Shown: piece by piece, positions 10,801 through 64,000 of the stretch
Layout: every line of letters begins with the position of its first letter
Numbering within the stretch: the stretch's first letter is position 1
DNA from: Mytilus californianus
Lineage: Eukaryota
Direction: 5' to 3'
Length of the DNA stretch: 64,000 nucleotides
Assembly: GCF_021869535.1 (NCBI RefSeq)
Contig: NW_026262734.1
Span: 6,014,001 to 6,078,000, forward strand
Program-made: the position numbers and the translations under genes
The notes under the pieces: model-generated
The model's input: only the letters and a program-made list of their open reading frames with translations
Told to the model about the DNA's origin: nothing
The model's database searches: none

Positions 10801-13800
10801 AAGGGTAATAATAAGCTTATATCATGTATATATAAGGAATTCTACATTATTTTTTGAATTCTTGAATTAATCTTTTTGATTGGCAACCACTGTTTTACAT
10901 GTAATTGCCGCTTTAGAAACCTATTTTTAGTAAATAGCAAAAACGTGGAGAAATTTCTCTTTTAGACTACCTAGATCAAATTTATTTTGCTTTCTAAGCT
11001 ATGATTTGTAACTCTCATAAAACGAAGCATATGCATAGGTATGCAACACAAATATGATGAGATGAAATGGAATTATTGGCGGTTACCGGTAACGGAAATG
11101 AACAAAATCCGGAAATGTTTAAAAATCAAAAAAATCGAGGCGGGCGGGGATGAAAATCTATTGATAAATTTTAATTGGCCTTATAGTTAGAAAATAGCTA
11201 ATACAATAGGTTTCCAAAAAACAACCAAAAACAATTAGTTTCCAAAAAACAACCAATGAAGGGCAATAACTCCTATAACAAGTCATCTGACAATTTTGGA
11301 CATGAAACTTTTAGGAAATTATCAATTGTTGATCAACTTTGCTAATCAAAGTTTTTTGTCTATCTATTATAATATAGCTTTGAGATAATATAATATACAA
11401 ATTGTAAATGTAATATTGGTCAAATTTCATGTTTCAGTTATATATGTTACTTTTTATTTACCAATGTCACATTTATCCCAAGGTATTCCTTATTGCAATT
11501 TTTACATTCTATCTTACCTCAACGACAGCAACAACTTTAGTGACAAAGTGTGATCCATCTGTATCCTTATAAATGCCAAAACCTTTTACTAATGCATCAG
11601 GAGTAGATGTCTTCTGATTAGACTTTAATGAGGAAGATGTGTCTGATCCATCACTGAAGTTATAAATACAGATTAGACTTTAATGAGGAAGATGTGTCTG
11701 GTCCATCACTGAAGTTATAAATACAGATTAGACTTTAATGAGGAAGATGTGTCTGGTCCATCACTGAAGTTATAAATACAGATTAGACTTTAATGAGGAA
11801 GATGTGTCTGTTCCATCACTGAAGTTACAAATACAGATTAGACTTTAATGAGGAAGATGTGTCTGGTCCATCACTAAAGTTATATAAACAGATTAGACTT
11901 TAATGAGGAAGATGTGTCTGGTCCATCACTGAAGTTATAAATACAGATTAGACTTTAATGAGGAAGATGTGTCTGATCCATCACTGAAGTTATAAATACA
12001 GATTAGACTTTAATGGGGAAGATGTGTCTTGTCCATCACTGAAGTTATAAATACAGATTAGACTTTAATGGGGAAGATGTGTCTTGTCCATCACTGAAGT
12101 TACATAAACAGATTAGACTTTAATGAGGAAGATGTGTCTGGTCCATCATTGAAGTTATAAATACAGATTAGACTTTAATGGGGAAGATGTGTCTTGTCCA
12201 TCACTGAAGTTACATAAACAGATTAGACTTTAATGAGGAAGATGTGTCTGGTCCATCACTGAAGTTATATAAACAGATAAGACTTTAATGAGGAAGATGT
12301 GTCTGATCCATCACTGAAGTAATAAATACAGATTAGACTTTAATGAGGAAGATGTGTCTGATTCATCATTGAAGTTATATAAACAGATTAGACTTTAATG
12401 AGGAAGATGTGTCTGATCCATCACTGAAGTAATAAATACAGATTAGACTTTAATGAGGAAGATGTGTCTAATTCATCATTGAAGTTATATAAACAGATTA
12501 GACTTTAATGAGGAAGATGTGTATGGTCCATCACTGAAGTTATATAAACAGATTAGACTTTAATGAAAAAGATGTGTCTGGTCCATCACTGAAGTTATAT
12601 AAACAGATTAGACTTTAATGAGAAAGATGTGTCTGATCCATCACTGAAGTTACAAATACAGATTAGACTTTAATGAGGAAGATGTGTCTGATCCATCACT
12701 GAAGTTATATAAACAGATTAGACTTTAATGAGGAAGATATGTCTGGTCCATCACTGAAGTTATAAATACAGATTAGACTTTAATGAGGAAGATGTGTCTG
12801 GTCCATCACTGAAGTTATAAATACAGATTAGACTTTAATGAGGTGGATGTGTCTGATCCATCACTGAAGTTATAAATACAGATTAGACTTTAATGAGGAA
12901 GATGTGTCTGATCCATCACTGAAGTTATATAAACAGATTAGACTTTAATGAGGAAGATATGTCTGGTCCATCACTGAAGTTATAAATACAGATTAGACTT
13001 TAATGAGGAAGATGTGTCTGGTCCATCACTGAAGTTATAAATACAGATTAGACTTTAATGAGGAAGATGTGTCTGATCCATCACTGAAGTTACATAAACA
13101 GATTAGACTTTAATGAGGAAGATGTGTCTGATCCATCACTGAAGTTACATAAACAGATTAGACTTTAATGAGGAAGATGTGTCTGGTCCATCACTGAAGT
13201 TATATAAACAGATTAGACTTTAATGAGGAAGATGCGTCTGATCCATCACTGAAGTTATATAAACAGATTAGACTTTAATGAGAAAGATGTGTCTGGTCCA
13301 TCACTGAAGTTATATAAACAGATTAGACTTTAATGAGGAAGATGTGTCTGATCCATCACTGAAGTTATAAATACAGATTAGACTTTAATGAGGAAGATGT
13401 GTCTGATCCATCACTAAAGTTATATAAACAGATTAGACTTTAATGAGGAAGATGTGTCTGGTCCATCACTGAAGTTATAAATACAGATTAGACTTTAATG
13501 AGGAAGATGTGTCTGGTCCATCACTGAAGTTATATAAACAGATTAGACTTTAATGAGGAAGATGTGTCTGATCCATCACTGAAGTTATAAATACAGGTTA
13601 GACTTTAATGAGGAAGATGTGTCTGATCCATCACTGAAGTTATTAATACAGATTAGACTTTAATGAGGAAGATGTGTCTGGTCCATCACTGAAGTTATAA
13701 ATACAGATTAGACTTTAATGAGGAAGATGTGTCTGGTCCATCACTAAATACAGATCAGACCTTAATGAGGAAGATGTGTCTGGTCCATCACTGAAGTTAC

Positions 13801-16800
13801 ATAAACAGATTAGACTTTAATGAGGAAGATGTGTCTGATCCATCACTGAAGTTATATCAACAGATTAAACTTTAATGAGGAAGATGTGTCCGATCCATCA
13901 CTGAAGTTACATAAACAGATTAGACTTTAATGAGGAAGATGTGTCTGATCCATCACTGAAGTTATATAAACAGATTAGACTTTAATGAGGAAGATGTGTC
14001 TGGTCCATCACTGAAGTTACATAAACAGATTAGACTTTAATGAGGAAGATGTGTCTGGTCCATCACTGAAGTTATATAAACAAACTTTATAAATTTATTT
14101 TGCTTGCACAATTTCAAAAAGCTATACAAAACTAGAAAATTTATAAGGGTTCCGCGAAACCCAGTGTCTCGCCTACTTTTGCTGTTAATCGAAGGCTCAA
14201 CAAAAATGAGGAAAAAAAATAATAACAATATTCCTTTCAATACTATCTTTTGATTGTAAGAAACCTCTGTCCAAGTTTGGTAAAAATCCAGGATAGTTTA
14301 TGAATCTAATAAATGTTTTAAATCTTTAACTGCAGACTGTATGTAATGTTAACTGGAAGAAAAACTAAGTCCATTTATAAGTAAAATGCGGATAAATAGG
14401 TACAAAATTTTCACAAAATTTCCTTCTAGGTACTAGCTTTTGATCATAAACAAGCTTCTGACCAAGTTTGGTACAAATCCAGGATAGTTTAAGAAAGTTA
14501 TTAAAATTTTAAAAACTTTAACCACAGAGTGAATGTGATGTTTCCTGGCAGAAAACCTAAGTCCATTTATAAGTTAAATACCGAAAAAATGGAATTTTGT
14601 TTTTTAAAAGTTTACTTCTGGATACTATCTTATGATCATAAACAAGCTTCTGTCCAAGTTTGGTAGAAATCCAGGATAGTTTAAGAAAGTTATTAATATT
14701 TTAAAAACTTTAACCACAGAGTGAAAGTAATGTTTCCTGGCAGAAAAACTAAGTCCATTTATAAGTAAAATACGGAAAAACAGGATATTTTTTTTACAAA
14801 ATTAACTTCTGGATACTATCTTATGATCATAAACAAGCTTCTGTCCAAGTTTGGTAGAAATCCAGGATAGTTTAAGAAAGTAATTAAAATTTCAAAAACT
14901 TTAACCACAGAGTGAATATTTGTGGACACCGCTGCTGACGACGGAATGTAGGATCGCTATGTCTCACTTTTTCGACAAAAGTCGAAGGCTCGACAAAAAT
15001 GTGACTTCAAGAAACTTTAAGATACCCCACTGTAGCAACATGTTTCTATTTTTGTAAACATTTATTTTTGCTGTTTTAGAAGAATAAATGGAATGCCTAT
15101 TAAAAACATTAAATTACACTATTACAGCATTGCACTTTAAAAGAACACTGCAATGGTGAAATATCAATGATGAACTACCATAGGTTTTTGAAAAATAGAC
15201 CAAAACACAAAATTTAACCAAAGTCACTCAGGCAAGGTCATTGTGTTGTGATTGAAAATAATCTGAACTGTGTTGCACAATACAACACTATGGTAATGGA
15301 TATGATTGACACACTACCAGATGCTTCTGAGAAATGGCTGCAAGTTTATTTTCAGATGGTCACCATTTTCTTGTCTTCATAAATTGTATTATTATATATT
15401 CTGTTATGGAGTTTGGTTTTGAAGTTTCAAAGTTATTCATCATTTTGATGATGCACCATGTTGGCATCAACCTGATGTGATTTGATATTAACGTATTTCA
15501 AGCCTTCACAAAAACCTGTGAGGTAGGTTTTTTTATGTTGAATCTATGTGTGCTATGCTTATTGTAATGTCTGCTTTAGAAAGTGCTTAATGTGTTGTTT
15601 GCATGTACACAAATGCATATGTTATTTTCAAATATGCTTGTTTAAATTTGGTATTTAACTGTTAAGTGCTTATTACATGACTGTTGTAATGTATACTAAT
15701 GCATCGAAGTATGCTTTAAACAAGGAATTATTTGAATCTGGAATAATTTTGAATTCTCGACAATTGATAACAAATGTATGATGAAAACTAACCCAACTAA
15801 ATAAGGTTAATTCTACTTTCACTGATATTTCAGTATGAACTAACTAACCCCCCTACATTCGGTTAGTATTCATCATACATTTCTTATCAATTTTCCAGAA
15901 TTCAAAATTATTTCAGTTCACATACATTGTTTTTAAGATTAGATTTTTGGTATTTAGTTATATTTATTAAACAATAGAACTGAGACCACTATCTCCAAAC
16001 TTAATTAAATTATAAATTATTCTTTTATCATTGAAATGCTCGGAAAAGTAAACAGTTTCCTTGTTTATAATTGTTATTATATAATATTTTAAAGCTATTA
16101 TATTGTTATTTAATTAGATTACATCCATTAGAATGAAAAGCCTAAATCCTGTAAGTTGGTATCTTTTATCTATTTTATTTACAAAATATTGTTTCTGGTA
16201 ACTTCTTGTGGGCTTTAAACCATTCTTTATGGTAATATGTAGATACATTTTGTATATTGTATATAGATATAGGAAGATGTGGTATGAATGCCAATGAGAC
16301 AACTCTCCATCCAAGTAACAATTTATAAAAGTAAACCATTATAGGTCAAGGTACGGCCTTCAACAGGGAGCATTGGCTCACACCGAACAGCAAGCTATAA
16401 AGGGCCCCAAAAATTACTAATGTAAAACCATTCAAACGGGAAAACCAACGGTCTAATCTATACGTTTTAATGGTACCAAACCTTCTCCCTTTTATGTACA
16501 CATAAGTGTGACTTCCATAGTAAAATAATTTATTTCTGATAACTAGTTTCATTTTGTACAACAATCTTTATATGTGACTTATTATACTTACAAAATCCTT
16601 AATCCACAAATTAGAGCAAACGACATAAATAGTTGGTGGTACTTCCTTTCACTTTTCTTTTCATCATCCAATAAATTCAGTAGGTTATCAGAAAAAAATT
16701 GTAACTTTGGATATAGTCTGAAAATATAAAGGATTACTTATTCTATAGATAGCCAAAGACAGTAAACGAAGAATCAAGTTCTGGATCTTCTTCACAGAAA

Positions 16801-19785: not shown

Positions 19786-19851
19786 GGCTGAAGGGTCTAT
19801 AAGTAAGGGGAGAGGAACCAGTATTCTGTTCTGTACAGGTAAGATCCTCCG

Positions 19852-19858
19852 TTATATA
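19852..19858 (-). promoter_or_regulatory. Possible TATA box of the nuclease-like gene
   Basis: TATATAA 67 nt upstream of the ATG at 19785; position only. Confidence 0.3.
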
Positions 19859-20239: not shown

Positions 20240-21200
20240 TTAGGTCTTTTTACAGGCATGCATGGTCCTATTAGACCTACAGAAGACGTTTGACACAGTA
20301 GATCACAAGATATTATGTGACAAATTAGAAGTAATTGGGGTTAGATCTATACCTTGGTTTGAGTCATATTTGACAAACAGAAAACAGGTTGTAAGTGCAT
20401 GTAAATGGGGTGATTTCAGAAGTATGTTATATTACATGTGGTGTCCCTCAAGGTAGCATACTGGGTCCACTATTGTTTTTGATCTATGTCAATGATGTTC
20501 AAACTAGCATCGACTCAGATTGTAAAGTTTTGATATATGCAATTTTATTTTCCCATATAGACCCTGGGGTCATCTCGCATAAATTATCCAGAATGCTGGA
20601 ATCATGCCATGATTGGTTAACTGACAATAAATTGTCCCTACATTTGGGAAAGACGGAGAGTATAATTTTTGGTCCTGGTCGAAAACTTCGGTGTTTAATA
20701 CCGGGTGATATTGCTATCTCGTGTAATGGTATTAATATTGAATCCAAAACTTTTGTAAAATATTTGGGAATAATAATTGATCAGTTTCTAACTGGTGATT
20801 TTATTGTCAACTCTAGTGAAAAAAAGTCAATCAAAGGCTTAAATTATTATATAGAAACAAAGAGTGTCTAAATTTTCAATCTAGGAAAACATTGTGCTCT
20901 TCTCTGATTCAATGTCATTTTGACTATGCATGTGCATGCTGGTATGAAGGTATATCAAAACAAATGAAGAATAAACTTCAAGTGGCACAAAATAAGATTG
21001 TGAGATTTATTCTGCAATTACATCCCAGAAAGATTGTGACATATATTGAATTTAAGAAATTGGGCTTTTTAAATATTAGTAATAGAGTCAAACAACTAAG
21101 ACTCAATCATGTTTTCAACATTTTTAACAATATATGCCCAAATTATTTACTACATACTAGTTTTGTTAAAAATGAAACATCTTTCAATACAAGATCTAGT
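20240..21200 (+). mobile_element. 5'-truncated, decayed non-LTR retrotransposon RT fragment (L2/CR1-group, Crack/Daphne-like)
   Basis: LLDLQKTFDTVDH, WFESYLTNRKQ, GVPQGSILGPLLFLIYVND, KYLGIIID and QNKIVRFIL lie across three frames. YADD is reduced to IYA-ILF, so the catalytic Asp pair is missing. Confidence 0.92.
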
Positions 21201-22657
21201 GATAAGGTACGATCGAGACACGTGTTTCGAAATAACTTTCATCGAGTACGCGCGAGACTGAAAGTTTGGAAAAATAGAAACTTTTGAGAGCAAATCAACA
21301 AACAGAACAGCCAACTTTGTGTTCGTGGATGCTACAACCTTAGTGTGAGCTCAATAGCATATTTTAACTTGGTATTTACAGACAATATATGTCAATTAAG
21401 TTAAATGAAGAAAACTTTGCTAACCTTAAAATATTTATATTTAGAATAATTAACATTTTGTTCTTCTTCAATACTTCAACGAACATAAATCATTGATAAA
21501 GATGTCTATATTATTATTATCTTATCAGCTCTCCGCGACAGCTATTGTTTTTTTATTGCAAAATGAATGTCCAATTTTGCTTCCATTACATATAAATAAA
21601 CTCATCATAGATACCAGAATAAGAATTGTGTACGCCAGACACAATCTACAGTAAAAAAAAAGGTATTCTGTAAGACCATGGAAGTAAAGTGAAAGGAGTC
21701 AATATAAATTCTTCCATGGTAAGACAAAGAACAATCTTTACAATAAAACCGAATGATAGACAATTACAATAAGCTTCTCTCGAATTACAACAAAAATATG
21801 ACAATATGATAACGTAATGAATAACAGCTTTGGATAAATGTTACCTGATACAGAACATTAGAATTTTTCAATTTCGTCACAAAAAGTTAAACACAATAGT
21901 GACTATTTTCACCGGAACTAACATTTGGCAGGTGTCTAAGACTGTAAAAAAAATGTATAGTTATTTACATCATAGAATGATCTTATTCGAAAATAAGTAA
22001 GTCAATTCATAGAATCCAACAGTAATGATTCGAAAGACCATATATATATTTTCTTAAACATCTGTAATTTGTACTCTTTCCAAATCACTATAGCTGGTTT
22101 TATTTAACGAACATTTACATTCTTTCAACAAAGAGCCTCATATCGAAAATCAAAGATTTTTCTTTCTGTATCATTCATCAAACGTAAAACGGGGATCAAC
22201 GTTCATAAGAAATGGCCCTTTTCTTTAATGAAAGTTTAACCAACAGGATTGATGATCTAGAGGGTTACAATGAATACCTTGCTTTGAAGTAATGTATGAC
22301 TCTTTATTTTGAGGTAACTTTTATTTTTTCCATTTCCTTCTTCACTTTGAATTTAATTTATAAGTTGTTTTTTTTTTATGTTTAAACTTCAACAAAAAAT
22401 TGAAAGTAAACACTTTAGTTGCGGACATATAAAAACGTATTAAATATTTTCATCCACTGAAAACAGGCTCTTCTACGATTACGTTATTACATGTCGGTTT
22501 TATCCAAGAAGTTACCTTATACATTAATTAAGTTAAAACAAAAAAATATGAATTTCCTTGTTTTAATATAAACGAATTTATCATATAAAGCGTACACATC
22601 CTCTTTCTAACATAAAACAACACGTATAACAATCACGTGTAAGTTGTGCAAGTTAAA

Positions 22658-22663
22658 TATAAA
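22658..22663 (+). promoter_or_regulatory. TATA box of the Kunitz gene
   Basis: TATAAA 44 nt upstream of the ATG at 22702. Confidence 0.55.
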
Positions 22664-22701
22664 GCAGACTTCAAGCATTACTGACATTTACTATTCTAAT
22701 C

Positions 22702-30053: not shown

Positions 30054-30056
30054 TTA

Positions 30057-38485: not shown

Positions 38486-38486
<1 letters not shown>

Positions 38487-49500: not shown

Positions 49501-52500
49501 TTATATAAAATATAAAAAATAAGGAGATGTGGTATGATTGCCAATGAGACAACTATCCACCAAAGTTCAAATGAAATGGGTGTAAGCAATTATAGGCAAC
49601 AATGAGAAAACCCATACCTTATATAGTTGTCTATAAAAGGCCCTGACATGAAAAATGGGAAACAATTCAATTGAGAAAACTAACAGCCTATAAATTTATA
49701 ACAAAACAATTTAAGAAAAACAAATATTACAGACATGAACCAACTACAATCACTGATCTACAGGCTCCTGATGCCCTTTATAAAGCTTTCATTGTGATTT
49801 ATTTTACAGTGGTGATCTCAGAACCATCTGCAGACAAGAAAGCATTAAAGATAATTAAGTTACAGGACAGGGGAATCAATGTATTGACAACCACTGATAA
49901 GTAAGTATTAAAGATAATGTCAGTCTGTCCATTGGAATTCTAGTCACATTTTTCTCAAGAATTGCAAATCAGAGCTTCCTGAAATTTTATACTAGCTTAA
50001 GCTTACTTTACCGTGTGATGTATTTTCACAGCCGGCCTGATACAACAATTAATGACCCGGCTTTTCTTTGTCCACTAATATAGTTCCTTTTTATTATAGT
50101 GTCTTTTTTCTTTATTTTTGTTCTTTGCCTTCCTGATTCATTTCTTAGTTTTTATAGAGTGGAAATGAAAGAAGAGAGTTGAAATAAATTTTTGGATGCA
50201 TTATTTTAACTATTCAGTAGTGGGAATGAATGATTAGGCCAGTTGCAAAAGGTAACATTTATAGTTTTCGGAACACCTCTTGACTTAAATGTCCATACCA
50301 GTATGGATGTGTTTTGGCTAAATTAATGACCTGCATAGAAGGGATTTTCCTAAAAGTTGGATATAATGTTGTGAGACTTGTACTGTACATTAACATATCA
50401 AAAATTTTGCAAATTTGCAGGTTAATTTTTTTTTATGTAAAAAAACGTTATAAAGAAATGATAAGGAAATTAATTGTGGTCTATGGCCAGAGCTCATTGT
50501 CTAGTTATTTAACTTATTATACATGTAATGATGTATATATATATGCGTACAAATAATGGTCATATATGAACTTTTTGTCACATTTCTTCAGGAACCACAA
50601 TGCAGAGCCTCATGATATTAGGTTTCAAGCTTCATGTAAGCATGTAATACCCTGTGATGTGTTTTGACATCCATTGCTCATAAATTTCCTGTTTACCAAA
50701 TTCTTAATAACAGGGTATTGTAGTAAGCAATAGGTCACAGTTCATCTTGTTTTTTTTATGCCTCCGCTGTAGGCAACAAGGGCATTAAGTGTTACCCTTG
50801 ACCTTCCATCCCATTTTCTGCACTCTAAACGTTAGTTTGCCTCATGCAAATTTTATGTAACTCATAAACAATACTAAGAACCACAACACGCAGACAGAGT
50901 TTGGATTTGGGTTGTGAGTCATTTACCGTTCTAGAGTTGTGCTCCTTTTTTAACTTGGAAAATTGCAAAGCATCTTTCGTTTATTTTTGTTTTTTTATGC
51001 CCCCACCGTAAGCGATGGGGGCATTAAGTATTACCCTTGACCTTCCGTGTTTCCGTCCGTCACATGTTTGTTTGTTTGAAGCTTGGGCGAGGTAATTCAT
51101 GTCCTAGGACACATTCTTCTTTTATTTTTTCCATTAATTGTGTTTGATACAAGTATCTTACATTTGATTTACCAGAGGTAAAGTCAGATTATACCATAAA
51201 TAGTTTTATAAGAATAATACTGTTGGTCCTGACGTTTTATGTAAATTGTTGTCTAACTATATTTTACAGGTTTATAGTGCTGGGAGATATGACTGGACAT
51301 GTCAAATTGTTATCTGACTCTATTTTACAGGTTTATATTGCTGGGAGATATGACTGGACATGTCAAATTGTTATCTGACTCTATTTTACAGGTTTATATT
51401 GCTGGGAGATATGACTGGACATGTCAAATTGTTATCTGACTCTATTTTACAGGTTTATATTGCTGGGAGATATGACTGGACATGTCAAATTGTTATCTGA
51501 CTCTATTTTACAGGTTTATATTGCTGGGAGATATGACTGGACATGTCAAATTGTTATCTGACTCTATTTTACAGGTTTATAGTGCTGGGTGATTGTTATG
51601 TGACTATATTTTACAGGTTTATAGTGCTGGGTGATTGTTATGTGACTATATTTTACAGGTTTATAGTGCTGGGTGATCTGGCTGGACATGTCAAATTATT
51701 ATCTGACTATATTTTACAGGTTTATAGTGCTGGGTGATCTGGCTGGACATGTCAAATTGTTATCTGACTATATTTTACAGGTTTATAGTTCTGGGTGATT
51801 GTTATCTGACTCTATTTTACAGGTTTATAGTGCTGGGTGATTGTTATGTGACTATATTTTACAGGTTTATAGTGCTGGGTGATCTGGCTGGACATGTCAA
51901 ATTATTATCTGACTATATTTTACAGGTTTATAGTGCTGGGTGATTGTTATGTGACTGACTATATTTTACAGGTTAATAGTGCTGGGTGATTGTTATCTGA
52001 CTATATTTTACAGGTTTATAGTGCTGGGTGATTGTTATCTGACTATATTTTACAGGTTTATAGTGCTGGGTGATTGTTATTTGACTATATTTTACAGGTT
52101 TATAGTGCTGGGTGATTGTTATCTGACTATATTTTACAGGTTTATAGTGCTGGGTGATTGTTATCTGACTATATTTTACAGGTTTATAGTGCTGGGTGTT
52201 TGTTATCTGACTATATTTTACAGGTTTATAGTGCTGGGTGATTGTTATGTGACTATATTTTACAGGTTTATAGTGCTGGGTGATATGGCTGGACATGTCA
52301 AATTCTTTGATCAAAGTCTCAAGCTGGTTCATTGGTAAGTAGATTTTGTCCATTACAAGTCTGTAAGATAAAAGATAGAATTTTTCTATTATTGAATTAA
52401 AATTGAGAATGGAAATGGGGAATATGCTATTGAGACAACAACCCGACCAAAGAGCAGACAACAGCAGAAGGCTGATGCACAAACTGTAAACCCATCTTTG

Positions 52501-55500
52501 GAACTAATTCCATCGAAAATTGTACTATGTAAACAGCGTCATCTATGCAGTGTAGTGATTAACTGTGATTTCTCAATACTCTCTACAACAGTGATAACAT
52601 GTTACTCAGCAACATGGTGTTTCAAGTTGTACCGGACATTGAAAATTATACATAGTGTCTCCATTTGTAGAAGACATTTTCAATTAGCTTACAGCACAAC
52701 ACAATGTCTCACCTACAAGTAATAAACATTACAATATAGTGTCTCCATTTGTAGGGGACACCTACAAGTACATTACAACATAGTGGCTCCTTTGGTAGGG
52801 GACACCTACAAGTACATTACAACATAGTGGCTCCTTTGGTAGGGGACACCTACAAGTACATTACAACATAGTGGCTCCATTGGTAGGGGACACCTACAAG
52901 TACATTACAACATAGTGGCTCCTTTGGTAGGGGACACCTACAAGTATATTACAACATAGTGGCTCCTTTGGTTGGGGACACCTACAAGTACATTACAACA
53001 TAGTGGCTCCATTGTAGGGGACACCTACAAGTACATTACAACATAGTGGCTCCATTGTAGGGGACACCTACAAGTACATTACAACATAGTGGCTCCATTG
53101 TAGGGGACACCTACAAGTACATTACAACATAGTGGCTCCTTTGGTAGGGGATACCTACAAGTACATTACAACATAGTGGCTCCATTGGTAGGGGACACCT
53201 ACAAGTACATTACAACATAATGGCTCCTTTGGTAGGGGACACCTACAAGTACATTACAACATAGTGGCTCCTTTGGTAGGGGACACCTACAAGTACATTA
53301 CAACATAGTGGCTCCTTTGGTAGGGGACACATACAAGTAAATTTCAACATAGTGGCTCCATTGGTAGGGGATACCAAGTACATTACAACATAGTGGCTCC
53401 TTTGGTAGGGGACACATACAAGTACATTTCAACATAATGACTCCATTGGTAGGGGACACCTACAAGTACATTTCAACATAGTGGCTCCATTGGTAGGGGA
53501 AACCTACAAGTACATTACAACATAGTGGCTCCTTTGGTAGGGGAAACCTACAAGTACATTACAACATAGTGGCTCCTTTGGTAAGGGACACATACAAGTA
53601 CATTTCAACATAGTGGCTCCATTGGTAGGGAAAACCAAGTACATTACAACATAGTGGCTCCTTTGGTAGGGGACACCTACAAGTATATTACAACATAGTG
53701 GCTCCTTTGGTAGGGGAAACCTACAAGTACATTACAACATAGTGGCTCCTTTGGTAGGGGACACATACAAGTACATTTCAACATAGTGGCTCCATTGGTA
53801 GGGAAAACCTACAAGTACATTACAACATAGTGGCTCCTTTGGTAGGGAAAACCTACAAGTACATGACAACATAGTGGCTTCTTTGATAGGGGACACCTAC
53901 AAATATATTACAACATAATGACTCCATTGGTAGGGGAAACCTACAAGTACATTACAATATAGTGGCTCCTTTGGTAGGGGACACCTACAAGTATATTACA
54001 ACATAATGACTACATTGGTAGGGGAAACCTACAAGTACATTTCAACATAGTGGCTCCATTGGTAGGGAAAACCTACAAGTACATTACAACATAGTGGCTC
54101 CTTTGGTAGGGGACACCTACAAGTACATTACAACATAGTGGCTCCTTTGGTAGGGGACACCTACAAGTACATTACAACATAATGACTCCATTGGTAGGGG
54201 ACACCTACAAGTACATTACAACATAGTGGCTCCTTTGGTAGGGGACACCTACAAGTACATTACAACATAATGACTCCATTGGTAGGGGACACCTACAAGT
54301 ACATTTCAACATAGTGGCTCCTTTGGTAGGGGACACCTACAAGTACATTACAACATAGTGGCTCCTTTGGTAGGGGAAACCTACAAGTACATTACAACAT
54401 AGTGGCTCCTTTGGTAGGGGAAACCTACAAGTACATTACAACACAGTGGCTCCTTTGGTAATGGACACTTATACAATATAACCAGATATGATGCTATAAA
54501 AAGTCTTATAGCTTAAACAGATCACTGCTATAAATTGACCACTATTTAACAAACAAACACAAATTCATTTTAAACTTTCACTTATAATTCCTCTTTCTCT
54601 TGTACACAAAACAAGTAGGTTGAATCAAATCTAATCAATAAAAATGGGAAGATAGTATTAAAATGTTTTTGAAGGATAGCTGAGACTTGAAGTATCAATA
54701 GTTTCTCATGTCCATGATAAAATGTCATCTTCCATTACATTGTAGGTATCAGGATTTCCACCTCGGACCAGCCACTGCCATCTCATTTGCCCATTATCCA
54801 GATTTCCAATCAGTGTAAGTACCGGTCATTTGCATATATTAACCTAGTTATTTCTAGTTTATTTATAAATCTAGCATGTCATAGCTTCGTTGTTAAATAT
54901 TCTCCATATAGATGTTAAAAGTCACATGATGCTAGAATAAAAAATATCTATATATTAATCTTGTTTGAGCAAGTCAGCATTTCTGGTAAAATGAGGGAAG
55001 GAAACTTATAATTCTGTACATGAATAAGAGGAACTGTATAGTATAAATCAATGATAAAGCAATCCACCAACAACATAAAAAAAGACCATCTAATTCAGTC
55101 ACTGTAACAAGTTATTGTACATTATACTTGTTAATTTTCAGAGCCAAAGAAGGAACTAACTACCCACCAGATGCTACAATAGAAGCTAGGAAGTTTGTCA
55201 TTAGAGATTTTGTTGTAGGAAGTAGTATTGCTGTCTTTGGTAATGTCACTGCAGATGGAACTAAAGTTGATGTGAGTATTGTCCATTTGTTTGTGTTTAG
55301 TGTTTAAATATAAGGGAAACTTTGTGTCTGATATATTTTACAGTTATTTTAAGCTATTACCCTTGTCTTAGAGTTTTCATGACAATGGGATTCATTTATA
55401 AAAATATTATGTTCAAACGTAATGGAGGCATGAAAAAAGATCAGTCAGCTAGTAGCCATTACATTTCTAGTGAACAAATGATAGACACTGGCCATATAGC

Positions 55501-58500
55501 AGTAAATAGAACATTTTGAGGAAAAGGGTTAGAGACTCGGTCATATCAAACAAGGTTTTTAACTAAAGGAAGGACTGCTTTGAAAAGGTTTATTTTTTAG
55601 GTTTCTTTAAAGGACAATTATTTTACAATAATTAAAAAACTAACCGTTTGCTTACAGGGAATATTATAAATTTTTAACTATAGGAAGACACAAACATGCA
55701 TTTAAGATAAAAAAAAAAGTTAAGATAAAATCTATTCTTATCTTGACTATAATCAAGTTAACAAATTGGTCTTCTTTTTTTCAATGAAATGACAATATGC
55801 AAATTAACAAAAATGTTTATATTGTAGTTAATTCACAGAGAACATGATGCTGCCATTCATGCTTTATCTGCTCATCCTACAAAGTAAGTTTGTGAGAGTT
55901 ATCTCCCTTTAGTATCAGAATGTTTACATTGTATTTAATTCACAGAGAACATGATGCTGCCATTCATGCTTTATCTACTCATCCTACAAAGTAAGTTTAT
56001 AAGAGTTAACACCACAGACTTGCAAGTTTCATTTAATTTTGGCATGGCATCATTATTTGGTTTTATGATAAGGCTGACTTTTCACATCATGTAGTAGGTT
56101 ATATACAGTGAATCTTAAGGTGTCCTTGTCAATTTGACTATCTGATTAGTTAACATTTTCAATGCCAGAATCGAAAATATATTGTATAAAGTGTTCAACT
56201 GGCCATATACAAATATGGCATCATTAGTCTTTTAATTCCTTAAATGATTCAAAATACTAAAGAATATAATATAGCTGAGAGCATTTTAAGTTTTCTAGTT
56301 GATGTTTGAGAAACTGATTTCAAACATTTCTTTTTTTTCAGACCATATTTGATAATTGGTAGTTATGCAGGATTAATAAAGATATGGGACTATGAAAAGA
56401 AGTAAGTCAATAAGTAATGATCTATTTTATCATGGAGATTTAGTTTAAAACCAAATCGAATGTAAAGTCAAAAAGGTATATAATTAAACATTGGAGTAAT
56501 AGTCAATCGCTTCACCATTATCTGAAGACCTTATTTAGGATTCTGTGATACTTTACCTGTTGATGTCATTCAGCAATCAGTTTACTTTGTGGCAGACTTT
56601 TTCTCTTGTAATGTTAAAGTTTTATTGGAACATCTGTGATACACTTCTAGTGGCATACACATAGAGATAATGTGTATTAAAAACAAGTGTTAGATATATG
56701 TCCAAGATTAAGTTTACCTGTTTTGAGTGCATTGCATTGCTTTCCAGTGCATTTAAAACATTGGTCTGTACTTCTCCTTTTTGTGGTATGAACTATACAA
56801 CAAAACTTTAATCTATATATTTATTATCAGACAAGTGGTAGTAACCCGACAGTTTGAGAGAGGATGTTTAATCAGATGTTGTGCATTTGACCCTAAAGGA
56901 CAATATATAGGTAAGTTTTATATACCATTGGGTTTTATCAGAAATATTTTGACAGCTTTAGATGTTTAAGAACATGATCAGTCAGGGGTTTATCAGGGTT
57001 TGTTTGTTATTTCCCATAGTAATCAGGTTTGTTTGTTTGTTATTTCCCATAGTAATCAGGTTTGTTTGTTTGTTATTTCCCATAGTAATCAGGTTTGTTT
57101 GTTTGTTATTTCCCATAGTAATCAGGTTTGTTTGTTTGTTATTTCCCATAGTAATCAGGTTTGTTTGTTTGTTATTTCCCATAGTAATCAGGTTTGTTTG
57201 TTTGTTATTTCCCATAGTAATCAGGTTTAACCCATTTGTAGTCACAGCAACAAATAGTAACAAAAACATACAATTCTGTTTTTAAGTAATATTCTGATAC
57301 AATTAATATTTTTGACAGATTTTGCTTTTGAGAATGGTCAGCAGAGATTATAGATTTTGATAAATTTACTATTTGTTTACAGCTATTGGTTTTGTGAATG
57401 GTCAGCTGAGAGTATAGATTTTGATAAATTTAATATTTGTTTACAGCTATTGGTTTTGTGAATGGTCAGCTGAGAGTATAGATTTTGATAAATTTACTAT
57501 TTGTTTACAGCTATTGGTTTTGTGAATGGTCAGCTGAGAGTAGTAGATTCTATCACTTTAGAAGATGAATTATCAGAACCGTTCCGTTATGCCAGATATG
57601 CCATCACTCATTTAGCTTTCTCCCATGATTCTCAATACTTAGCTACAGCCGTAAGTATTTTACTTGGGTTATTTATTCATCTCAACAGGAACCTGTTGCA
57701 TGAAGTTCAAATGTATGATTTTTTTAGAAATTAAAGTCTTCACAATTAATTGCTTCAAAATATTTGTTAATGTGTGTTCTGTGAAGTGATGATCACATCC
57801 ATTTTGTTTGACTGTAATTACTTGTCATTATCATTGTCATGCTATACTGTTTACTACAACTTTCAGAGCCAAGCTACCAAAGTAAGTCACATGCTTGTTG
57901 TAAAAACACACCAATTTATTATAGAAACAACCAAATATTTTATTCCATTTAGCTTCTTTTTTTCTATTTTTTTTTTATATACCGGTAATTGAATAGTTAC
58001 AATTTCAGTATGCACCCTTTACTCTTTATGTCAATAAGTTTAAGTTCATATCATAGTGGTGTATTGAGTTATATGTATATATATATTTCCCTACACCAAA
58101 TTTAGTTTATTGGTATATATGTATAATTACCCTTTTATTCTTTTCCAAATCCTAATAAGTGTTTTAATTTGCTATTCAATGATCATTTTTTTTTTGTATT
58201 ATTCATACACATTTTATAACATAAATGCAATATTGGAGAAAAAGTTAATATATTCTCTCAACTCACTGAACTGTTGTTTGGTTACATTCGCCAGCTTGGA
58301 TGTTATACCACTCAAAGTATTTACTTAATTTCTTATCTATAAAGTATTGTTCCTGCATGAGTTATCTCCCATATCATAGGGCATGTACACTCACTAGTTT
58401 ACAAAGGATTATTGCATGTTATATTTCATGTAGTAAAAAGATTATTTCTAATGTATTTACATGTATATATAGGAGAGAGCTTTATAGTCTAGACACATTT

Positions 58501-61500
58501 TTATACTGGTATTCAGTGGTATATCACAAAGAACCATGATTATATATATAGTTGCTTATTCTTATATAGAGAGATGATAAATACACCAGAAATAACGTTC
58601 TGATGAAAATCGTTTGTTTGAATAAAGAAAGAATATAAAGTGGGGTCAATATTTAGATAGGTGTAAATTCAGGAATTTTTTTAAGATTGAAGTAACATTA
58701 AATAACAGTGCAGCTCATATTTTATCCTTAAAGAATTAAAAAAAACTGTGGCATATAAATCATTGAACAATAACTCAACATTCAAGTTACTCAAAAATGA
58801 GCCCCACATGAAAAGCTCAACCAAAACCTCAACAAATTAATCCAAACTAATTTTGGTAACTCAACCTTTTTGTATTATCTTGATCAATAGATTACATGTA
58901 TATCAATTTGAATCCTTTGATTAACTCAATGTTCTGAAAGTTAACAATGAAATTTGAAAGAAAACTTTGCAATGTGAAAGTTAACCTTAAAATCTGAAAT
59001 CTGAGAGTAAACCTTGAAATCTAAAAATAAACTTTGAAATCTGAAAGTATATAGACATTAAAATCTGAAAAAATAACCTTGAAATTTTAAAGTAAACATT
59101 GAACAAGTTGCTTTCATCTTAGGAAAATTTGGTTTAATTGTTATTTTTACATTAACAAAAACTAAAGTTGTATAATATTTTATGATGTGTCAATTGTATT
59201 AATTTTACATGTTTTTGTTGAAGGTTCGAGAAGTTACAATTGATGTTTTATGTTTAAATACATGTGTAATTAAAAAAAATGTGTCTGAGGTGACATTTAA
59301 GCATGGAGAGTACACAACACCCTACATAACACTATATGTAATGTTATTTTAGGATGGGGAATACACAGTATCAGTATATAAAAGACAGAGAGGTGTAGAG
59401 GTGGATCCTTATATATACCTTGGAAGATATAGAGCTCACTATAAAGAGATAAAAGATCTGATGTTTGGTATACATTTAGATAATAATCAACCAAGATTGT
59501 TGTCATTGGGGATGGATAGAGTTTTAGTAAGTATTAATAAGAATAGATATTTTACATGTTTATAGATATTTATTGAATAATATAACACAATTTATATGTA
59601 ATATTTGATTTTAAAATAGATTACACCAACATCCAACAAATAGCTTGATAATGACGTATATAAAAAGATATGAGAAGATGCACAAACAAATGTGGGCAAA
59701 CTATTTACAAACCAGCTTCTTTTAATAAGATAATCAGATTAGCAAGATAGTGTGACTTGGTGCAAGATAGTGTGACTTGGTACTGAACATTTAAATTTCA
59801 AATATTGTAGATTTATTTATTGGTCATGGAATACCTGTGTTTTTTTAAGGATTTTATTGAACAGAGAAACATTAATAACCTTATAGCTGTTTTATTTTGG
59901 CATAATGCTTTAAATATTTGGTCTTTTATAAGAAGCTTTATTAAAATTTGCTAAACTTCCAAGATGTCTCAGAGAATCATGTTATCGTAAATTCACTTCA
60001 TACTTATAAATGCTGTATTCCTTTCAGGTTGAGTATGACCTTGAGAACAGTAGTAAAGATGACCTTAGAATAACCAGTTCTGACAGGATAGAACAAAGTG
60101 CTGTACCTCAATGTATGACCTGGTATCCACCAATCACTAAAGAGCATTTTGTCCTAACAGCTAATGATCAGGTAAAACTTCTATTTATCTCACTGTATGG
60201 TTATTCAACCATTCAAAATGGAGATATCTTTCTCATAGTCAGTGAATGAGTTAAACTTAAAATCATTGCTGTATAAATCTGTATGCTTGTATCGTACAAT
60301 AACAAAGGAAAGCATTTTGTCCTCAAAGCCTTGAATATAAAAATAAGAATAGGTGGTATTATTGCCAATAAGACAACTATCCACCAGAGTTCAAATGAAA
60401 TGGATGTTATCAATTATAGGCCACTGTACATCCTTCAACAATAAGAAAAACCCATACTGTATAGTTGGCTATAAAAGTCCCTGACATGAAAAATGTGAAA
60501 GAATTCAACTGAGAAAACGAACAGCATAATTTATAACAAAACAATTTACGAAAAAACAAATATGACAGACACAAACCAACGACAACCACTGAACTACAGG
60601 CTCCTGACTTGTGAAAGGCACATAATGAATGTTGCAGGGTAACATGTTTGTGAGTGTTCAACCCTCCCCCTAAGCTGGGACAGTGGTGTAACCCCACAAC
60701 ATAACAACAAACTGTGAAAATCAGATGCAATTGGCTTAACTCAAAAGATTGGTACGAGGAAAAAACAACTAACATAAAAACAATAGACTTGTTCACTGCT
60801 ATACACTACTGTAATATCTTGGTATCCAATCACAATAAATTTGTCTTTTCATCCAATTATCAAGTTAGACTTATTCACTGCCTTAGATATCATTGTGTCA
60901 GTTCTTCAAGTTTAGATAGTCATGACATATCTTTATTCATTTATTTGGGGTTTTTTTACAGTATAAATTCAAGTTATATAATGCCACCACCAAAATGTGT
61001 AGGAAGACTCTACTTGGACCAACATATGGTACACCAGTAAAAAGGTAATGTTTTATTAACATGATTACTGAAAGTTCAGACTTGGTAAGTCGCAAACATA
61101 ATATCCAATACATATATCTGTATGCAGATTTTCCTGAAACCACTATGATCTTTCTTGCATTTTTGTCCATTTTTCAAAAATCGCAATAATTTCTGAATTG
61201 AAAGCATTATACGCAAAGATTAATAATTTAACATTATCACTATAGATTTTGAAAGGAGATTTACAGCAAAAATTTAAGTATGATCATTTATTCAGATTTT
61301 TGTGTATATTTTGATTTCTAACATTCCTTTTTATAGAATGGAAGTAGTACCGACAGCTGATCCTGTTAAAGATAAACGTTACTTGGCCTATGTCACAACA
61401 GATAAAGTAGGCCTGAGTATGCTGCCACTCGATGGCAACCCACACAATGCCATGGCCTTGATCACACATCCAGGGGGAGTAGAAAATATGGTGTGTAGCT

Positions 61501-64000
61501 ACGATGGAAAATACTTGTTCACTGCAGGGGGAGCTGATGCTACAGTACACATGTGGGAAATCAACGTCAGGTATGTTACTCATGCACACATCACACATCC
61601 ATGGGTTAGGATCGTTTGGGTCAGTTTTGATACTTATCAATAGGTCACACACACACAGGTTAATATTGTGTGTGATTAAGATAGAATGTCTTTGATAGCT
61701 TTCTTCTTCAAATATGATTAAAATATTAACTTAAATGGGATTTAAAATTTGTAAAAGTATATAAAAAGAAATTGAAATGAAGGAAAATCAGATTTGTACC
61801 TATAGAAAATAATGTCTGTTACAACAGCATTTAAACATAGCACATCCTTTGGGAAACAGACTTTAATACTAGTATACACATCTTGATATAAACCAGAATT
61901 CACCATAAAATTTTATTTTCATAATTTATTCTGTTCACTATGCTTGAAAAAAGTAAAAACAAAAATATTGAAGTATTTAATGCTTGAATGTTTGTTAGAT
62001 TTTTCTTGGCAACTTAATTTATCATTTAAAGAAATACAACCTTTTATAAATTGTAAGAATTAAATAGAGAATTGAAATCTCATTGGAATTTGGAACCAGA
62101 ATAGTGCCCTTTTTTTTTTTTTTTGAAGTAAATATTTTTTATTACATATCTGCTGTTTTAACAATTTACTCGGATAACAGCGTTAGCCCGAGTATCCATG
62201 TTATTAGTTACTGAATCTCCAGGGAAAAAGCTTGTTAAAAAAGTAATCAATTATTATCAGTAATAACATCTACATTCTTTTAAATACAGTGTATACATAT
62301 AAAGAATAAAATCCCATGGTATAAATCACGTGTTTACGGAATATCAATTTGCTTTCCGAATTTGTACTCATTTTCCCTTATTTATTTTAATCATTGACAC
62401 AGTTATTTTGTACTTGACCTTTTGTGTCGGATTTGTTAACCTGTTTACTAATTCATTGTTCGAAAACTAGAGCAAAAATGCACATGTTTGTAGTTAACAT
62501 TAGATTATAAACTAGTTTGCTAAGTATTATATACTATTCATTAGTGCCTTACTTACTTCAATCCTCAAGTCTAAATGATATTAATAAATGGAAATGTGGG
62601 GGTGATAACTAGACAGCAATCCATCAACATGTGCATAATGTTAAACTCTAAATGTTCTTGTGTATAAAAGAGACTATAAAAAATCTTCAATCGTATTTAA
62701 AACACATTCTATTAAATCTTTAAAAACCATTCTGTTGTTTATACTTTATGGTGAATTAGAAGCACACTGTGGACTTGAGGGGAGATTTAAAACAATTCTA
62801 TGTTTTATATTTCACAGTGTTTTGGAAGCACAGTCCAGACTTGGAGGAGAAGATTTAATACCATTCTATGGTTTACTGGAAGGTGGTAGAGATGGAGAAC
62901 TGTTCAGAGAATTAGAAGATTACTTTTATTATGCACAAATCAGAAGGTAACTTCACTCTTAAATTTAATAAAGGAAAACCCACTATCAAAAAATGTTTCA
63001 CTATAAATATATGTTCTAACATGAAAGTGAAAACCAAATAACAGAAAAGAAATTTCAAAAATGATAACCTTTTTTGATCCTTTTAAAATAATATCTAGGC
63101 TCTGTTTTTCAAATGTATTTTATACATTTTCATTTAAGTGTCTAATATCCATATGTCATTAAAGAATGAACCCTTTACTTTGCAGTCAAGGTGTGAATGC
63201 AATGGATAAAAGAGAAGTATCAGTAAAGATTCCACTATCAGAAGTACCATTTGTAATGAGGGCAATGGGTTTCTACCCATCTGAACAAGAGGTAAGATTC
63301 CACTATCAGAAGTACTGTTTGTTATGAGGGCAATTCGTTTCTACCCATCTGAACAAGTGGTAATGTTATCATATAATACTAGTTGTACATAAAGCACTTT
63401 TAACACAATTTATTTAAAACTATAGGTAAAAAGATTAATGAATTCTACAGTAATTTTAATTAAAATAGAAGTTTTTGTGTAACTTTAAGTGCTGTCATTC
63501 TCTCTCATGAAAGTCATAATTAATTGACTGTAAAGTAGTCAAAAACTTGAATATTTGATTAGTTATCTCCTTTTTGACAGTTTGAAAAAATAATATTTTT
63601 TAGAAGTTACTTGTAAACTAAACTGACACCATCACATTTCTGTTTGTTTATTGTCATGGTTAAATGTTCCTTGTTTTTTAATCCAATTTTAACAGCGTTT
63701 TCTGTTAAAATTAAAAAAAAGGTTATTTGGCTGGCAGACAGGGACATTCAGCTATAGTTTAAACATGAAACCAGAAATTAAAAGTCAAGATAACACTATA
63801 CAATTTTATTGGCTATTAAGTGACAAGTTACCAAATTTATTAAGACACTTTATAAAATTCATAAAAGTATCTAATAGTTTTCCTGAATCCTGTGGACAAA
63901 AATGCTAGAATCTTATTCCTTATATATTTTATATACCTTTATAACACATGGTTTTCTTTGTGAACAGATTGAGGATATGTTAAATGAAGTGAAGTTCAGT
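42887..64000 (+). CDS. CFAP251: Cilia- and flagella-associated protein 251 (WDR66), WD40 repeats; 3' end beyond the window
   Basis: 21 GT-AG exons splice in frame with no stop. Recognisable family motifs include [77 protein letters not shown] and [23 protein letters not shown]. Confidence 0.95.
44475..44621 (+). CDS. CFAP251: CFAP251 exon 2
   Basis: [10 protein letters not shown]...HILQGH|gtaagt. Confidence 0.95.
44791..46001 (-). mobile_element. ~1.2-kb Helentron-associated (HINE/DINE-1-like) element in CFAP251 intron 2
   Basis: Sub-terminal repeat aggtctttccac at 44823-44834 and 45970-45981; inverted partner gtggaaaaactt at 45988-45999; perfect stem-loop caattgttc-aga-gaacaattg at 44801-44821. 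Absent from the inverted duplicate. Confidence 0.8.
46402..46505 (+). CDS. CFAP251: CFAP251 exon 3
   Basis: [22 protein letters not shown]...WDTYTG. Confidence 0.95.
47072..47180 (+). CDS. CFAP251: CFAP251 exon 4
   Basis: IPVQTIF...[16 protein letters not shown]. Confidence 0.95.
47968..48126 (+). CDS. CFAP251: CFAP251 exon 5
   Basis: VLSIWNW...VIFYHW. Confidence 0.95.
48579..48747 (+). CDS. CFAP251: CFAP251 exon 6
   Basis: [10 protein letters not shown]...[12 protein letters not shown]; t|gtaggt. Confidence 0.93.
49810..49900 (+). CDS. CFAP251: CFAP251 exon 7
   Basis: [13 protein letters not shown]...VLTTTD; aa|gtaagt. Confidence 0.93.
51247..52265 (+). repeat. Mixed 61-/42-bp array of the CFAP251 exon 8 acceptor plus exon start (21 acceptors)
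   Basis: ttttacag|gtttata counted 21 times between 51269 and 52265. Confidence 0.95.
52266..52334 (+). CDS. CFAP251: CFAP251 exon 8
   Basis: [22 protein letters not shown]; tg|gtaagt. Confidence 0.92.
52711..54460. repeat. 44-bp minisatellite (acctacaagtacattacaacatagtggctcctttggtaggggac)n, ~40 copies, in CFAP251 intron 8
   Basis: Direct reading. Confidence 0.95.
54746..54814 (+). CDS. CFAP251: CFAP251 exon 9
   Basis: [22 protein letters not shown]. Confidence 0.92.
55142..55271 (+). CDS. CFAP251: CFAP251 exon 10
   Basis: [12 protein letters not shown]...DGTKVD|gtgagt. Confidence 0.92.
55828..55883 (+). CDS. CFAP251: CFAP251 exon 11
   Basis: attgtag|[18 protein letters not shown] aa|gtaagt. 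Confidence 0.9.
56342..56401 (+). CDS. CFAP251: CFAP251 exon 12
   Basis: [19 protein letters not shown]. Confidence 0.93.
56831..56910 (+). CDS. CFAP251: CFAP251 exon 13
   Basis: [11 protein letters not shown]...AFDPKGQYI. Confidence 0.93.
56995..57227. repeat. 33-bp minisatellite (gtttgtttgtttgttatttcccatagtaatcag)n, ~7 copies
   Basis: Direct reading; lies in CFAP251 intron 13. Confidence 0.95.
57511..57650 (+). CDS. CFAP251: CFAP251 exon 14
   Basis: [12 protein letters not shown]...[12 protein letters not shown]|gtaagt. Confidence 0.93.
59353..59526 (+). CDS. CFAP251: CFAP251 exon 15
   Basis: DGEYTVSVY...[10 protein letters not shown]...[12 protein letters not shown]. Confidence 0.95.
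60028..60171 (+). CDS. CFAP251: CFAP251 exon 16
   Basis: [13 protein letters not shown]...FVLTANDQ. Confidence 0.95.
60345..60790 (+). mobile_element. Long copy of an abundant dispersed repeat (gRtgtggtatgattgccaatgagacaact family)
   Basis: Related copies at ~16272, ~18180-18570 (-), ~20180, ~23765, ~48520 (-) and ~49520. Confidence 0.75.
60962..61044 (+). CDS. CFAP251: CFAP251 exon 17
   Basis: [27 protein letters not shown]. Confidence 0.95.
61337..61570 (+). CDS. CFAP251: CFAP251 exon 18
   Basis: MEVVPT...LPLDGNPH...YLFTAGG...MWEINV. Confidence 0.95.
62818..62946 (+). CDS. CFAP251: CFAP251 exon 19
   Basis: [13 protein letters not shown]...[11 protein letters not shown]. Confidence 0.95.
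63186..63291 (+). CDS. CFAP251: CFAP251 exon 20
   Basis: [10 protein letters not shown]...[12 protein letters not shown]|gtaaga. Confidence 0.95.
63968..64000 (+). CDS. CFAP251: CFAP251 exon 21 (partial, runs off the window)
   Basis: tgaacag|[11 protein letters not shown]. Confidence 0.9.
   Translation, partial: MEDMLNEVKFS

What the first reader, a model, noticed from the sequence alone, without database searches (positions are those of the whole stretch)
11518..63359. Recurrent exon-boundary microduplication: six independent splice-site tandem repeats in two genes, all leaving a protein-restoring copy
Seen: nuclease exon 3 acceptor (~45 copies), and in CFAP251 the exon 8 acceptor (21), exon 11 whole (2), exon 14 acceptor (4), exon 19 acceptor (2-3, diverged) and exon 20 donor (2). 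The copies range from near-identical to heavily decayed, so the process is recurrent. Several junctions sit on exon/intron microhomologies (aaatt, tagatt, gtaa). In each case one copy (the exon-proximal one for the acceptor and donor arrays) yields the normal protein. Inference: this is either a strong mutational bias at splice junctions or simply a very high background tandem-duplication rate filtered by splicing. Either way, length-variable decoy arrays could act as heritable tuners of splicing or as raw material for new exons and introns.
Basis: partly seen in the sequence, partly recalled or inferred. Interest (0 to 1): 0.8.

Follow-up and report, generated by a model that had tools for sequence, protein, structure and literature searches.

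The report
Splice-junction "mirage" minisatellites in mussel genes
Two neighbouring mussel genes carry six tandem repeats built from their own exon-intron junctions, a repeat type already known as "mirages" in amphioxus, and the RNA that could be checked uses only the one copy that gives the normal protein.

Summary
All six arrays are real and lie at true exon boundaries. I built a 21-exon, 984-aa open CFAP251 model and a 5-exon, 459-aa model of the minus-strand gene.

RNA reads and a transcript contig confirm exons 9-16. They show exon 11 spliced from the first copy and exon 14 from the last acceptor, with no RNA over the decoys. For exon 8, exon 19, exon 20 and the other gene's exon 3, the working copy is inferred from reading frame and homology only.

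This is a known kind of repeat: "mirage" minisatellites (amphioxus Adh3, globins, PGBD5) and the human F7 intron-7 VNTR. I found no mollusc report in the literature searched. The scan has already noted the same thing many times on other DNA of this genome (POLE, UPB1, ANKS3, RIMOC1, WDR7, PSMA4, MRPS15 and others).

Tandem repeats cover 28% of the window. Five of 15 genic repeat loci span a junction against 1.5 expected (nominal P = 0.012). That figure is post hoc, disappears under whole-array shuffling, and is not repeated at orthologous loci of three other Mytilus species (1 seen, 0.73 expected).

Best reading: frequent tandem duplication, often at microhomologies, filtered by splicing. The "splicing tuner" idea has no support. 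The "nuclease" label is unverified.

The parts
11616..14082 (-). 55-bp x 45 minisatellite. Each unit holds 17 nt of intron tail with the 3' splice site and the first 38 nt of exon 3 of the uncharacterised 459-aa gene. There are 44 decoy acceptors and 1 authentic one.
   Evidence: TRF; sequence; decoy count and premature stops. The array is absent from the M. trossulus, M. edulis and M. coruscus orthologous loci.
11518..11653 (-). Exon 3 (136 nt) of the minus-strand gene. It uses the array's last acceptor.
   Evidence: tblastn of Mytilus homologues P0001-P0004, whose proteins contain one copy of the exon head (DGPD/DGSD...). The five-exon model is open.
51239..52284 (+). CFAP251 exon 8 acceptor array with 61-bp units (25 intron + 36 exon) and 42-bp units (25 + 17), and higher-order blocks of 145 and 206 bp. 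There are 20 decoy acceptors and the authentic one at 52266.
   Evidence: The 7 proximal decoys are in frame and stop-free (+14 aa each); 13 give premature stops.
52266..52334 (+). CFAP251 exon 8.
   Evidence: The 3' end of exon 8 is joined to exon 9 in RNA reads and a transcript contig (loose end at 54745). Open gene model.
55812..56008 (+). 107-bp duplication of the whole of exon 11 with 16 nt of upstream and 35 nt of downstream intron. Copy 1 (exon 55828-55883) is used. Copy 2 (55935-55990) is a pseudo-exon whose acceptor has changed from tag to tat.
   Evidence: Joints 55271>55828 and 55883>56342 in RNA run X9 and transcript contig X1; sequence.
57291..57549 (+). 64-bp x 4 array at the exon 14 acceptor (29 nt intron tail + 35 nt exon head). 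There are three decoys (57319, 57383, 57447) and the authentic acceptor at 57511.
   Evidence: The joint from 56908/10 to 57509/11 is the only one seen (4 reads and a contig). RNA depth is 0 over 57280-57479 against 8.6 in the exon bin. All decoys give a stop.
62720..62875 (+). Decayed tandem repeat of about 67 bp (2 copies and a partial third) across the exon 19 acceptor at 62817|62818. Part of the intron tail resembles the conserved exon sequence downstream.
   Evidence: p<0.0005 against shuffles. Exon 19 is colinear with solved CFAP251 chains.
63226..63363 (+). 68-bp x 2 duplication of the exon 20 tail and GT, bounded by GTAA microhomology. The first donor (GAG|GTAAGA, 63291|63292) keeps the frame. 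The second (GTG|GTAATG, 63359|63360) adds 68 nt and shifts the frame.
   Evidence: The exon 20 peptide is colinear with solved CFAP251 chains. Donor choice was not seen in RNA.
52726..54468 (+). Purely intronic 44-bp x 40 minisatellite in intron 8. It is an example of the background arrays and holds no junction.
56998..57228 (+). Purely intronic 33-bp x 7 array in intron 13, 100% identical. It is missing from a DNA contig of another read set (X7).
   Evidence: joint 57029>57270 in X7.

Best explanation
These are 'mirage' minisatellites: local tandem duplications whose unit happens to span an exon-intron junction of the host gene.

The genome duplicates short segments (20-200 bp) at a very high rate, often between microhomologies of 3-6 nt, and then expands them by slippage or unequal exchange. 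Duplications wholly inside exons are removed by selection. Those in introns are neutral. Those across a junction survive when one copy stays contiguous with the rest of the exon and keeps a working splice signal. The spliceosome then uses only that copy: the last acceptor, which alone is followed by the full exon and its donor, or the first donor, as in human F7 intron 7. The other copies are silent intron sequence that decays.

Shown here:
- the arrays and their anatomy;
- the single frame-preserving copy in each array;
- RNA use of the correct copy for exons 11 and 14;
- the lineage-specific origin of the 55-bp array.

Inferred:
- copy choice at exons 8, 19 and 20 and at the other gene's exon 3;
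- the duplication mechanism.
For: - Background rate: tandem repeats cover 28.3% of the window, in 26 loci.
- Local origin: every array's unit is the local junction sequence.
- Microhomologies: AAATT at exon 8, TAGATT at exon 14, GTAA at exon 20, and GATACA in M. coruscus.
- RNA: run X9 and transcript contig X1 join only the first exon 11 copy and only the last exon 14 acceptor, with zero depth over the decoys.
- One working copy each: gene models are open only with the junction-contiguous copy and are colinear with solved CFAP251 chains and Mytilus homologues.
- Lineage-specific origin: the 55-bp array is absent from three congeners, while M. coruscus has its own 100%-identical triplication of the same exon's donor.
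- Unit anatomy fits a splicing filter: acceptor units keep 17-32 nt of intron tail, and the used donor keeps GTAAG.
- No excess in an unselected sample: 1 seen against 0.73 expected at the orthologous loci.
- Precedent: amphioxus mirages do not disturb splicing (PMC3087553; PMC3902484). In F7 IVS7 the upstream donor is chosen (PMC1557585).
Against: - Under a unit-level birth model, 5 of 15 genic repeat loci span a junction against 1.51 expected (P=0.012). A uniform background alone is therefore a modest misfit, though the window was chosen because of these arrays.
- RNA depth was low (4-9 reads per junction), so decoy use below about 10%, or use hidden by nonsense-mediated decay, cannot be excluded.
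- No RNA evidence exists for four of the six arrays.
- The 55-bp array shows no microhomology.
Confidence: 0.7

Rival explanations
1. Exon-intron junctions are true mutational hot spots for tandem duplication in this genome, for example through fork stalling at polypyrimidine tracts, chromatin at exon edges, or recurrent splice-consensus microhomology. On this reading mirages arise far more often than random placement predicts.
For: - There is a nominal 3.3-fold excess in the window (5 seen, 1.51 expected, P=0.012).
- The same 136-nt exon was hit independently in two species: at the acceptor in M. californianus and at the donor in M. coruscus.
- Both donor arrays have their breakpoint inside the donor consensus.
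- Other notes of this scan report dense junction arrays in many genes of the same genome. These are leads only and were not checked here.
Against: - The window was picked because of the arrays, so the P value is post hoc.
- Whole-array shuffling gives no excess.
- Orthologous loci chosen without regard to repeats show 1 seen against 0.73 expected.
- Breakpoint positions are also explained by a splicing filter.
Confidence: 0.2
2. The arrays are functional. On this reading, length-variable decoy splice sites tune splicing efficiency or produce regulated isoforms, such as 14-aa in-frame insertions from the exon 8 decoys.
For: Seven exon 8 decoys are in frame and stop-free. One intronic array differs in length between read sets.
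Against: - No decoy junction and no RNA depth over decoys was seen at exons 11 and 14.
- All 44 decoys of the 55-bp array, all exon 14 decoys and 13 exon 8 decoys give premature stops.
- The 55-bp array is absent from three congeners whose protein is the same.
- Amphioxus and F7 precedents are silent.
Confidence: 0.05
3. Some arrays or their copy numbers are assembly artefacts.
For: The reads tool could not lay reads inside the two largest arrays, so their copy numbers rest on the assembly alone.
Against: - Copies differ by scattered substitutions and have higher-order structure.
- Independent DNA contigs give about 4.8-fold depth over the exon 14 unit, and a second organism's contig spans the junction between the two exon 11 copies.
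Confidence: 0.03

Closest known systems
Amphioxus 'mirage' minisatellites: Adh3 (Canestro et al. 2002, as cited), globins BflGb6 and BflGb9 (PMC3087553), PGBD5 and TnC (PMC3902484)
   Same: They are tandem repeats whose unit spans an intron-exon boundary, at either the 5' or the 3' boundary. Many copies keep AG or GT, mRNA splicing stays normal, and units are 10-160 bp. They have been proposed as a source of new introns.
   Different: The phylum differs (a bivalve mollusc). Copy numbers are much larger here (45 and 21, against 2-6 in the globins), and six arrays lie in two adjacent genes. Somatic or allelic instability was not shown here.
Human F7 intron 7 37-bp VNTR (PMC1557585)
   Same: The first repeat element spans the exon-intron boundary, so the authentic donor is followed by identical pseudo-donors that stay silent and the most upstream donor is used. 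This matches the exon 20 duplication and the M. coruscus exon 3 donor triplication.
   Different: Donor choice was not measured here. The exon 20 second copy has already diverged (GAG to GTG at -2).
Tandem exon duplication leading to mutually exclusive exons (own knowledge: Kondrashov and Koonin 2001; Letunic et al. 2002)
   Same: Exon 11 is duplicated whole with its flanks. The copies differ by one residue (Ala/Thr), and including both would shift the frame.
   Different: The second copy has lost its acceptor AG, and RNA shows only copy 1. It is therefore a dead pseudo-exon, not an alternative exon.
Intron or splice-site creation by internal tandem duplication (Rogers model; Zhuo et al. 2007 and Gao and Lynch 2009, as cited in PMC3087553)
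   Same: At exon 20 the intronic part of the used donor (+3 to +8, AAGATT) derives from duplicated coding sequence.
   Different: No new intron was created. The intron only grew by 68 nt and its position is unchanged.

Membership tests
Mirage minisatellite | Head-to-tail tandem repeat with a minisatellite-size unit | tested here: met
   TRF gives units of 55, 61/42, 107, 64 and 68 bp. The diverged repeat of about 67 bp at exon 19 was found by alignment.
Mirage minisatellite | The unit spans an exon-intron boundary of the host gene | tested here: met
   Exon boundaries come from RNA joints for exons 9-16. The rest come from open gene models colinear with homologues.
Mirage minisatellite | Repeat copies carry splice signals (AG or GT) | tested here: met
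   There are 44, 20 and 3 decoy acceptors and 1 extra donor. The exceptions are the second exon 11 copy (tat) and the upstream exon 19 copy, which has no AG.
Mirage minisatellite | Regular splicing is kept and only one copy is used | tested here: met
   Met for exons 11 and 14 by RNA reads and a transcript contig. For exons 8, 19 and 20 and the other gene's exon 3 it is only inferred from frame and homology.
Mirage minisatellite | Length instability or polymorphism | tested here: inconclusive
   The 55-bp array is absent in three congeners, and an intronic 33-bp array is missing from another read set. Within-species variation of the junction arrays could not be measured.
F7-type donor VNTR | The most upstream of identical donors is selected | not tested
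Only the first donor keeps the frame.
Mutually exclusive tandem exons | Both exon copies are spliced, one per transcript | tested here: not met
   Only copy 1 is joined (5 reads and a contig). Copy 2 has no acceptor AG.
Recursive-splicing ratchet sites | An AG|GT site that regenerates a usable 5' splice site after the first splice | tested here: inconclusive
   Exon 8 decoys are AG|GTTTAT, which matches the GTRAGT donor consensus only at +1, +2 and +6 when read off the sequence. There is no RNA data for this array.

The most novel reading that the evidence does not exclude
Mussel genomes may have a junction-targeted tandem-duplication process. Exon-intron boundaries would then be genuine hot spots, several-fold above a unit-level random model genome-wide. 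This would constantly seed decoy splice sites and supply material for intron growth, splice-site shifts and new exons.
Probability: 0.2. Interest if true: 0.7.

Novelty: new member of a known kind. Interest (0 to 1): 0.38.

Why it matters
The result shows that the splicing machinery of a mollusc ignores as many as 44 near-identical decoy acceptors, so the arrays are a natural test bed for splice-site choice.

It extends "mirages" from amphioxus and a few human genes to bivalves, where they seem common. It also warns annotators that junction repeats can mislead gene models.

If the modest excess at junctions held genome-wide, it would point to an unrecognised mutational bias that bears on intron and exon turnover.

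Tried and rejected
- Canestro 2002 (PMC117041) is not held, so it is cited only through PMC3087553.
- Literature searches for mussel or Mytilus junction minisatellites found nothing relevant.
- Pfam gives no family for the minus-strand gene or its Mytilus homologues. The 'nuclease' label is unverified, and the M. edulis record name 'EXOC1' looks like a misannotation.
- CFAP251 is not within the 10-kb flanks of the orthologous loci. Its orthologues could not be fetched, because no stop-free reference is long enough for the word search. I left the big protein search unused.
Arrays are inserted sequence that touches a junction only at one end, so the test has little power.
- The recursive-splicing reading of AG|GT at exon 8 was judged unlikely from the poor regenerated donor.

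Full report
**Setting.** The window is AT-rich (about 33% GC) and very rich in tandem repeats. TRF finds 26 separate loci covering 18,123 of 64,000 bases, or 28.3%. Earlier notes of this scan name the genome as the California mussel. In agreement, the closest proteins to the minus-strand gene come from Mytilus edulis, M. trossulus and M. coruscus. An assembly gap (N run) at 880-1047 was left untouched.

**Gene models.**
- RNA reads of run X9 and a 2,949-nt transcript contig of run X1 were laid on 54480-60479. They gave GT..AG joints that define eight consecutive exons.
- I found the remaining exons from open frames, splice signals and homology.
- The result is a 21-exon, 984-aa open reading frame running off the window end.
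- Pieces of it match solved CFAP251 chains at E about 1e-22, 4e-15 and 5e-08, and the matches run on from one exon to the next without gaps.
- The minus-strand gene has five exons (19785-19073, 16717-16592, 11653-11518, 6584-6381, 4878-4678) and encodes 459 aa.
- Pfam finds no family for it or its homologues, so 'nuclease' is unverified.

**The six arrays.**

1. Minus-strand gene, exon 3.
   - The array is 55 bp x 45 at 11616-14082. Each unit is 17 nt of intron tail ending in cag plus the first 38 nt of exon 3.
   - The authentic acceptor is the last copy. All 44 decoys would give a stop about 295 codons into the protein.
   - Homologous proteins contain the exon head once.

2. CFAP251 exon 8.
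   - There are 21 acceptors between 51270 and 52266. Units are 61 bp (25 intron + 36 exon) or 42 bp (25 + 17), arranged in higher-order blocks of 145 and 206 bp. That means several rounds of duplication.
   - The seven proximal 42-nt decoys are in frame and stop-free. The other 13 give premature stops.

3. Exon 11.
   - A 107-bp unit holding the whole 56-nt exon is present twice.
   - RNA joins only the first copy. The second has tag->tat at the acceptor, and including both would shift the frame.

4. Exon 14.
   - Four 64-bp units are present.
   - RNA joins exon 13 only to the last acceptor. RNA depth over 57280-57479 is zero, against 8.6 in the exon bin. All three decoys give a stop.

5. Exon 19.
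   - A decayed repeat of about 67 bp crosses the acceptor. TRF misses it, but the alignments beat all 2,000 shuffles.
   - The upstream copy has no AG at the homologous position.
   - Part of the intron tail resembles conserved exon sequence downstream, so this one is older and more complex than a simple decoy array.

6. Exon 20.
   - A 68-bp unit of exon tail plus GT is present twice, bounded by GTAA.
   - The first donor (GAG|GTAAGA) keeps the frame into exon 21. The second adds 68 nt.

**What RNA does and does not show.** Copy choice was therefore observed only for exons 11 and 14, at 4-9 reads per junction. For the other four arrays it is inferred from frame and homology. Low-level decoy use, or use removed by nonsense-mediated decay, is not excluded.

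**Comparison across species.**
- I fetched the orthologous loci of the minus-strand gene from M. trossulus, M. edulis and M. coruscus.
- None has the 55-bp acceptor array, so it arose in the M. californianus lineage.
- M. coruscus has its own 52-bp x 3.1 repeat, 100% identical, made of the last 48 nt of the same exon plus gtaa and bounded by a GATACA microhomology. This is an independent junction repeat at the exon's other edge.
- In M. edulis an 86-bp x 16 array ends 6 nt before the exon 2 acceptor without including it.
- Contigs of a second, coded organism (X3) span the junction between the two exon 11 copies and the last exon 14 unit.

**Is junction overlap more than chance?** The answer depends on the null model.
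With the arrays placed at random at their present length, 3.6 of 10 CFAP251 arrays are expected to touch a junction and 4 do.
- Whole-array shuffling is a poor null, because arrays are inserted sequence anchored at one end.
- Under a birth model (arrays collapsed to one unit, a unit-length segment dropped at random, wholly exonic starts excluded), 1.51 of 15 genic loci are expected to span a junction and 5 do, P=0.012.
- This window was flagged because of the arrays, so that value is post hoc.
- The three orthologous loci were chosen without regard to repeats. They give 1 observed against 0.73 expected, which has little power.
- A roughly three-fold bias is therefore neither shown nor excluded.

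**Signs of a splicing filter.**
- Acceptor units always include 17-32 nt of intron tail, which leaves the last copy with its polypyrimidine tract.
- In both donor arrays the breakpoint lies inside the donor consensus, and the junction rebuilds GTAAG.

**What it is.**
[quoted passage not shown] They were later found in amphioxus globins, PGBD5 and TnC.
- In those cases splicing is undisturbed, and they were proposed as a source of new introns (PMC3087553; PMC3902484).
- The human F7 intron 7 VNTR is the donor-side analogue. Its identical pseudo-donors stay silent because the most upstream site is selected (PMC1557585).
- I found no mollusc report.
- Notes of this scan list the same thing in many other genes of this genome: POLE, UPB1, ANKS3, RIMOC1, WDR7, PSMA4, MRPS15, an SLC49A4 cluster and a cyclase. 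I used those notes as leads only.

**Verdict.**
- The best explanation is frequent local tandem duplication, often microhomology-mediated, filtered by splicing, with one junction-contiguous copy in use (confidence 0.7).
- A junction-targeted bias remains possible (0.2).
- A tuning function is unlikely (0.05).
- This is a new member of a known kind. It stands out for copy number and for six arrays in two neighbouring genes, and it is of moderate interest.

Noticed in passing
window 30057-33529: An inverted, partly deleted copy of CFAP251 is present (gene region 43538-48770, 93-97% identical, exon 4 region missing). It is flanked by a 52-bp x 41 satellite (27911-30053) and a 30-bp x 124 satellite (33584-37219).
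   Followed up: partly
L003 15739-15900 (M. coruscus): A 52-bp x 3.1 repeat, 100% identical, is made of the last 48 nt of the orthologous exon 3 plus gtaa. It gives three identical donors, bounded by GATACA microhomology.
   Followed up: yes
L002 12209-13615 (M. edulis): An 86-bp x 16 intronic array ends 6 nt before the exon 2 acceptor. A 50-bp x 3 array ends about 48 nt before the exon 4 acceptor. Neither includes the junction.
   Followed up: partly
window 57029-57270: A DNA contig of run X7 joins 57029 to 57270 with CAA between. It therefore lacks six of the seven 33-bp units and 41 bp beyond them. This is a likely length allele of an intronic array.
   Followed up: no
window 60280-60479: Contig depth here is extremely high in all DNA-like runs (about 183,000 in X7, against about 43 nearby), with many loose ends. 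A very high-copy dispersed repeat sits in CFAP251 intron 16.
   Followed up: no
window 20262-21287: Reverse-transcriptase fragments (Pfam RVT_1, E 4e-11) of a LINE-like element lie between the two genes.
   Followed up: no
window 4678-19785 (minus strand): The five-exon 459-aa gene has homologues only in Mytilus among the hits returned and no Pfam family. The M. edulis record is named EXOC1, which looks like a misannotation. The nuclease fold proposed by a first-stage note was not tested.
   Followed up: partly
window 880-1047: A run of 168 N (assembly gap or masked stretch) was left as it is.
   Followed up: no
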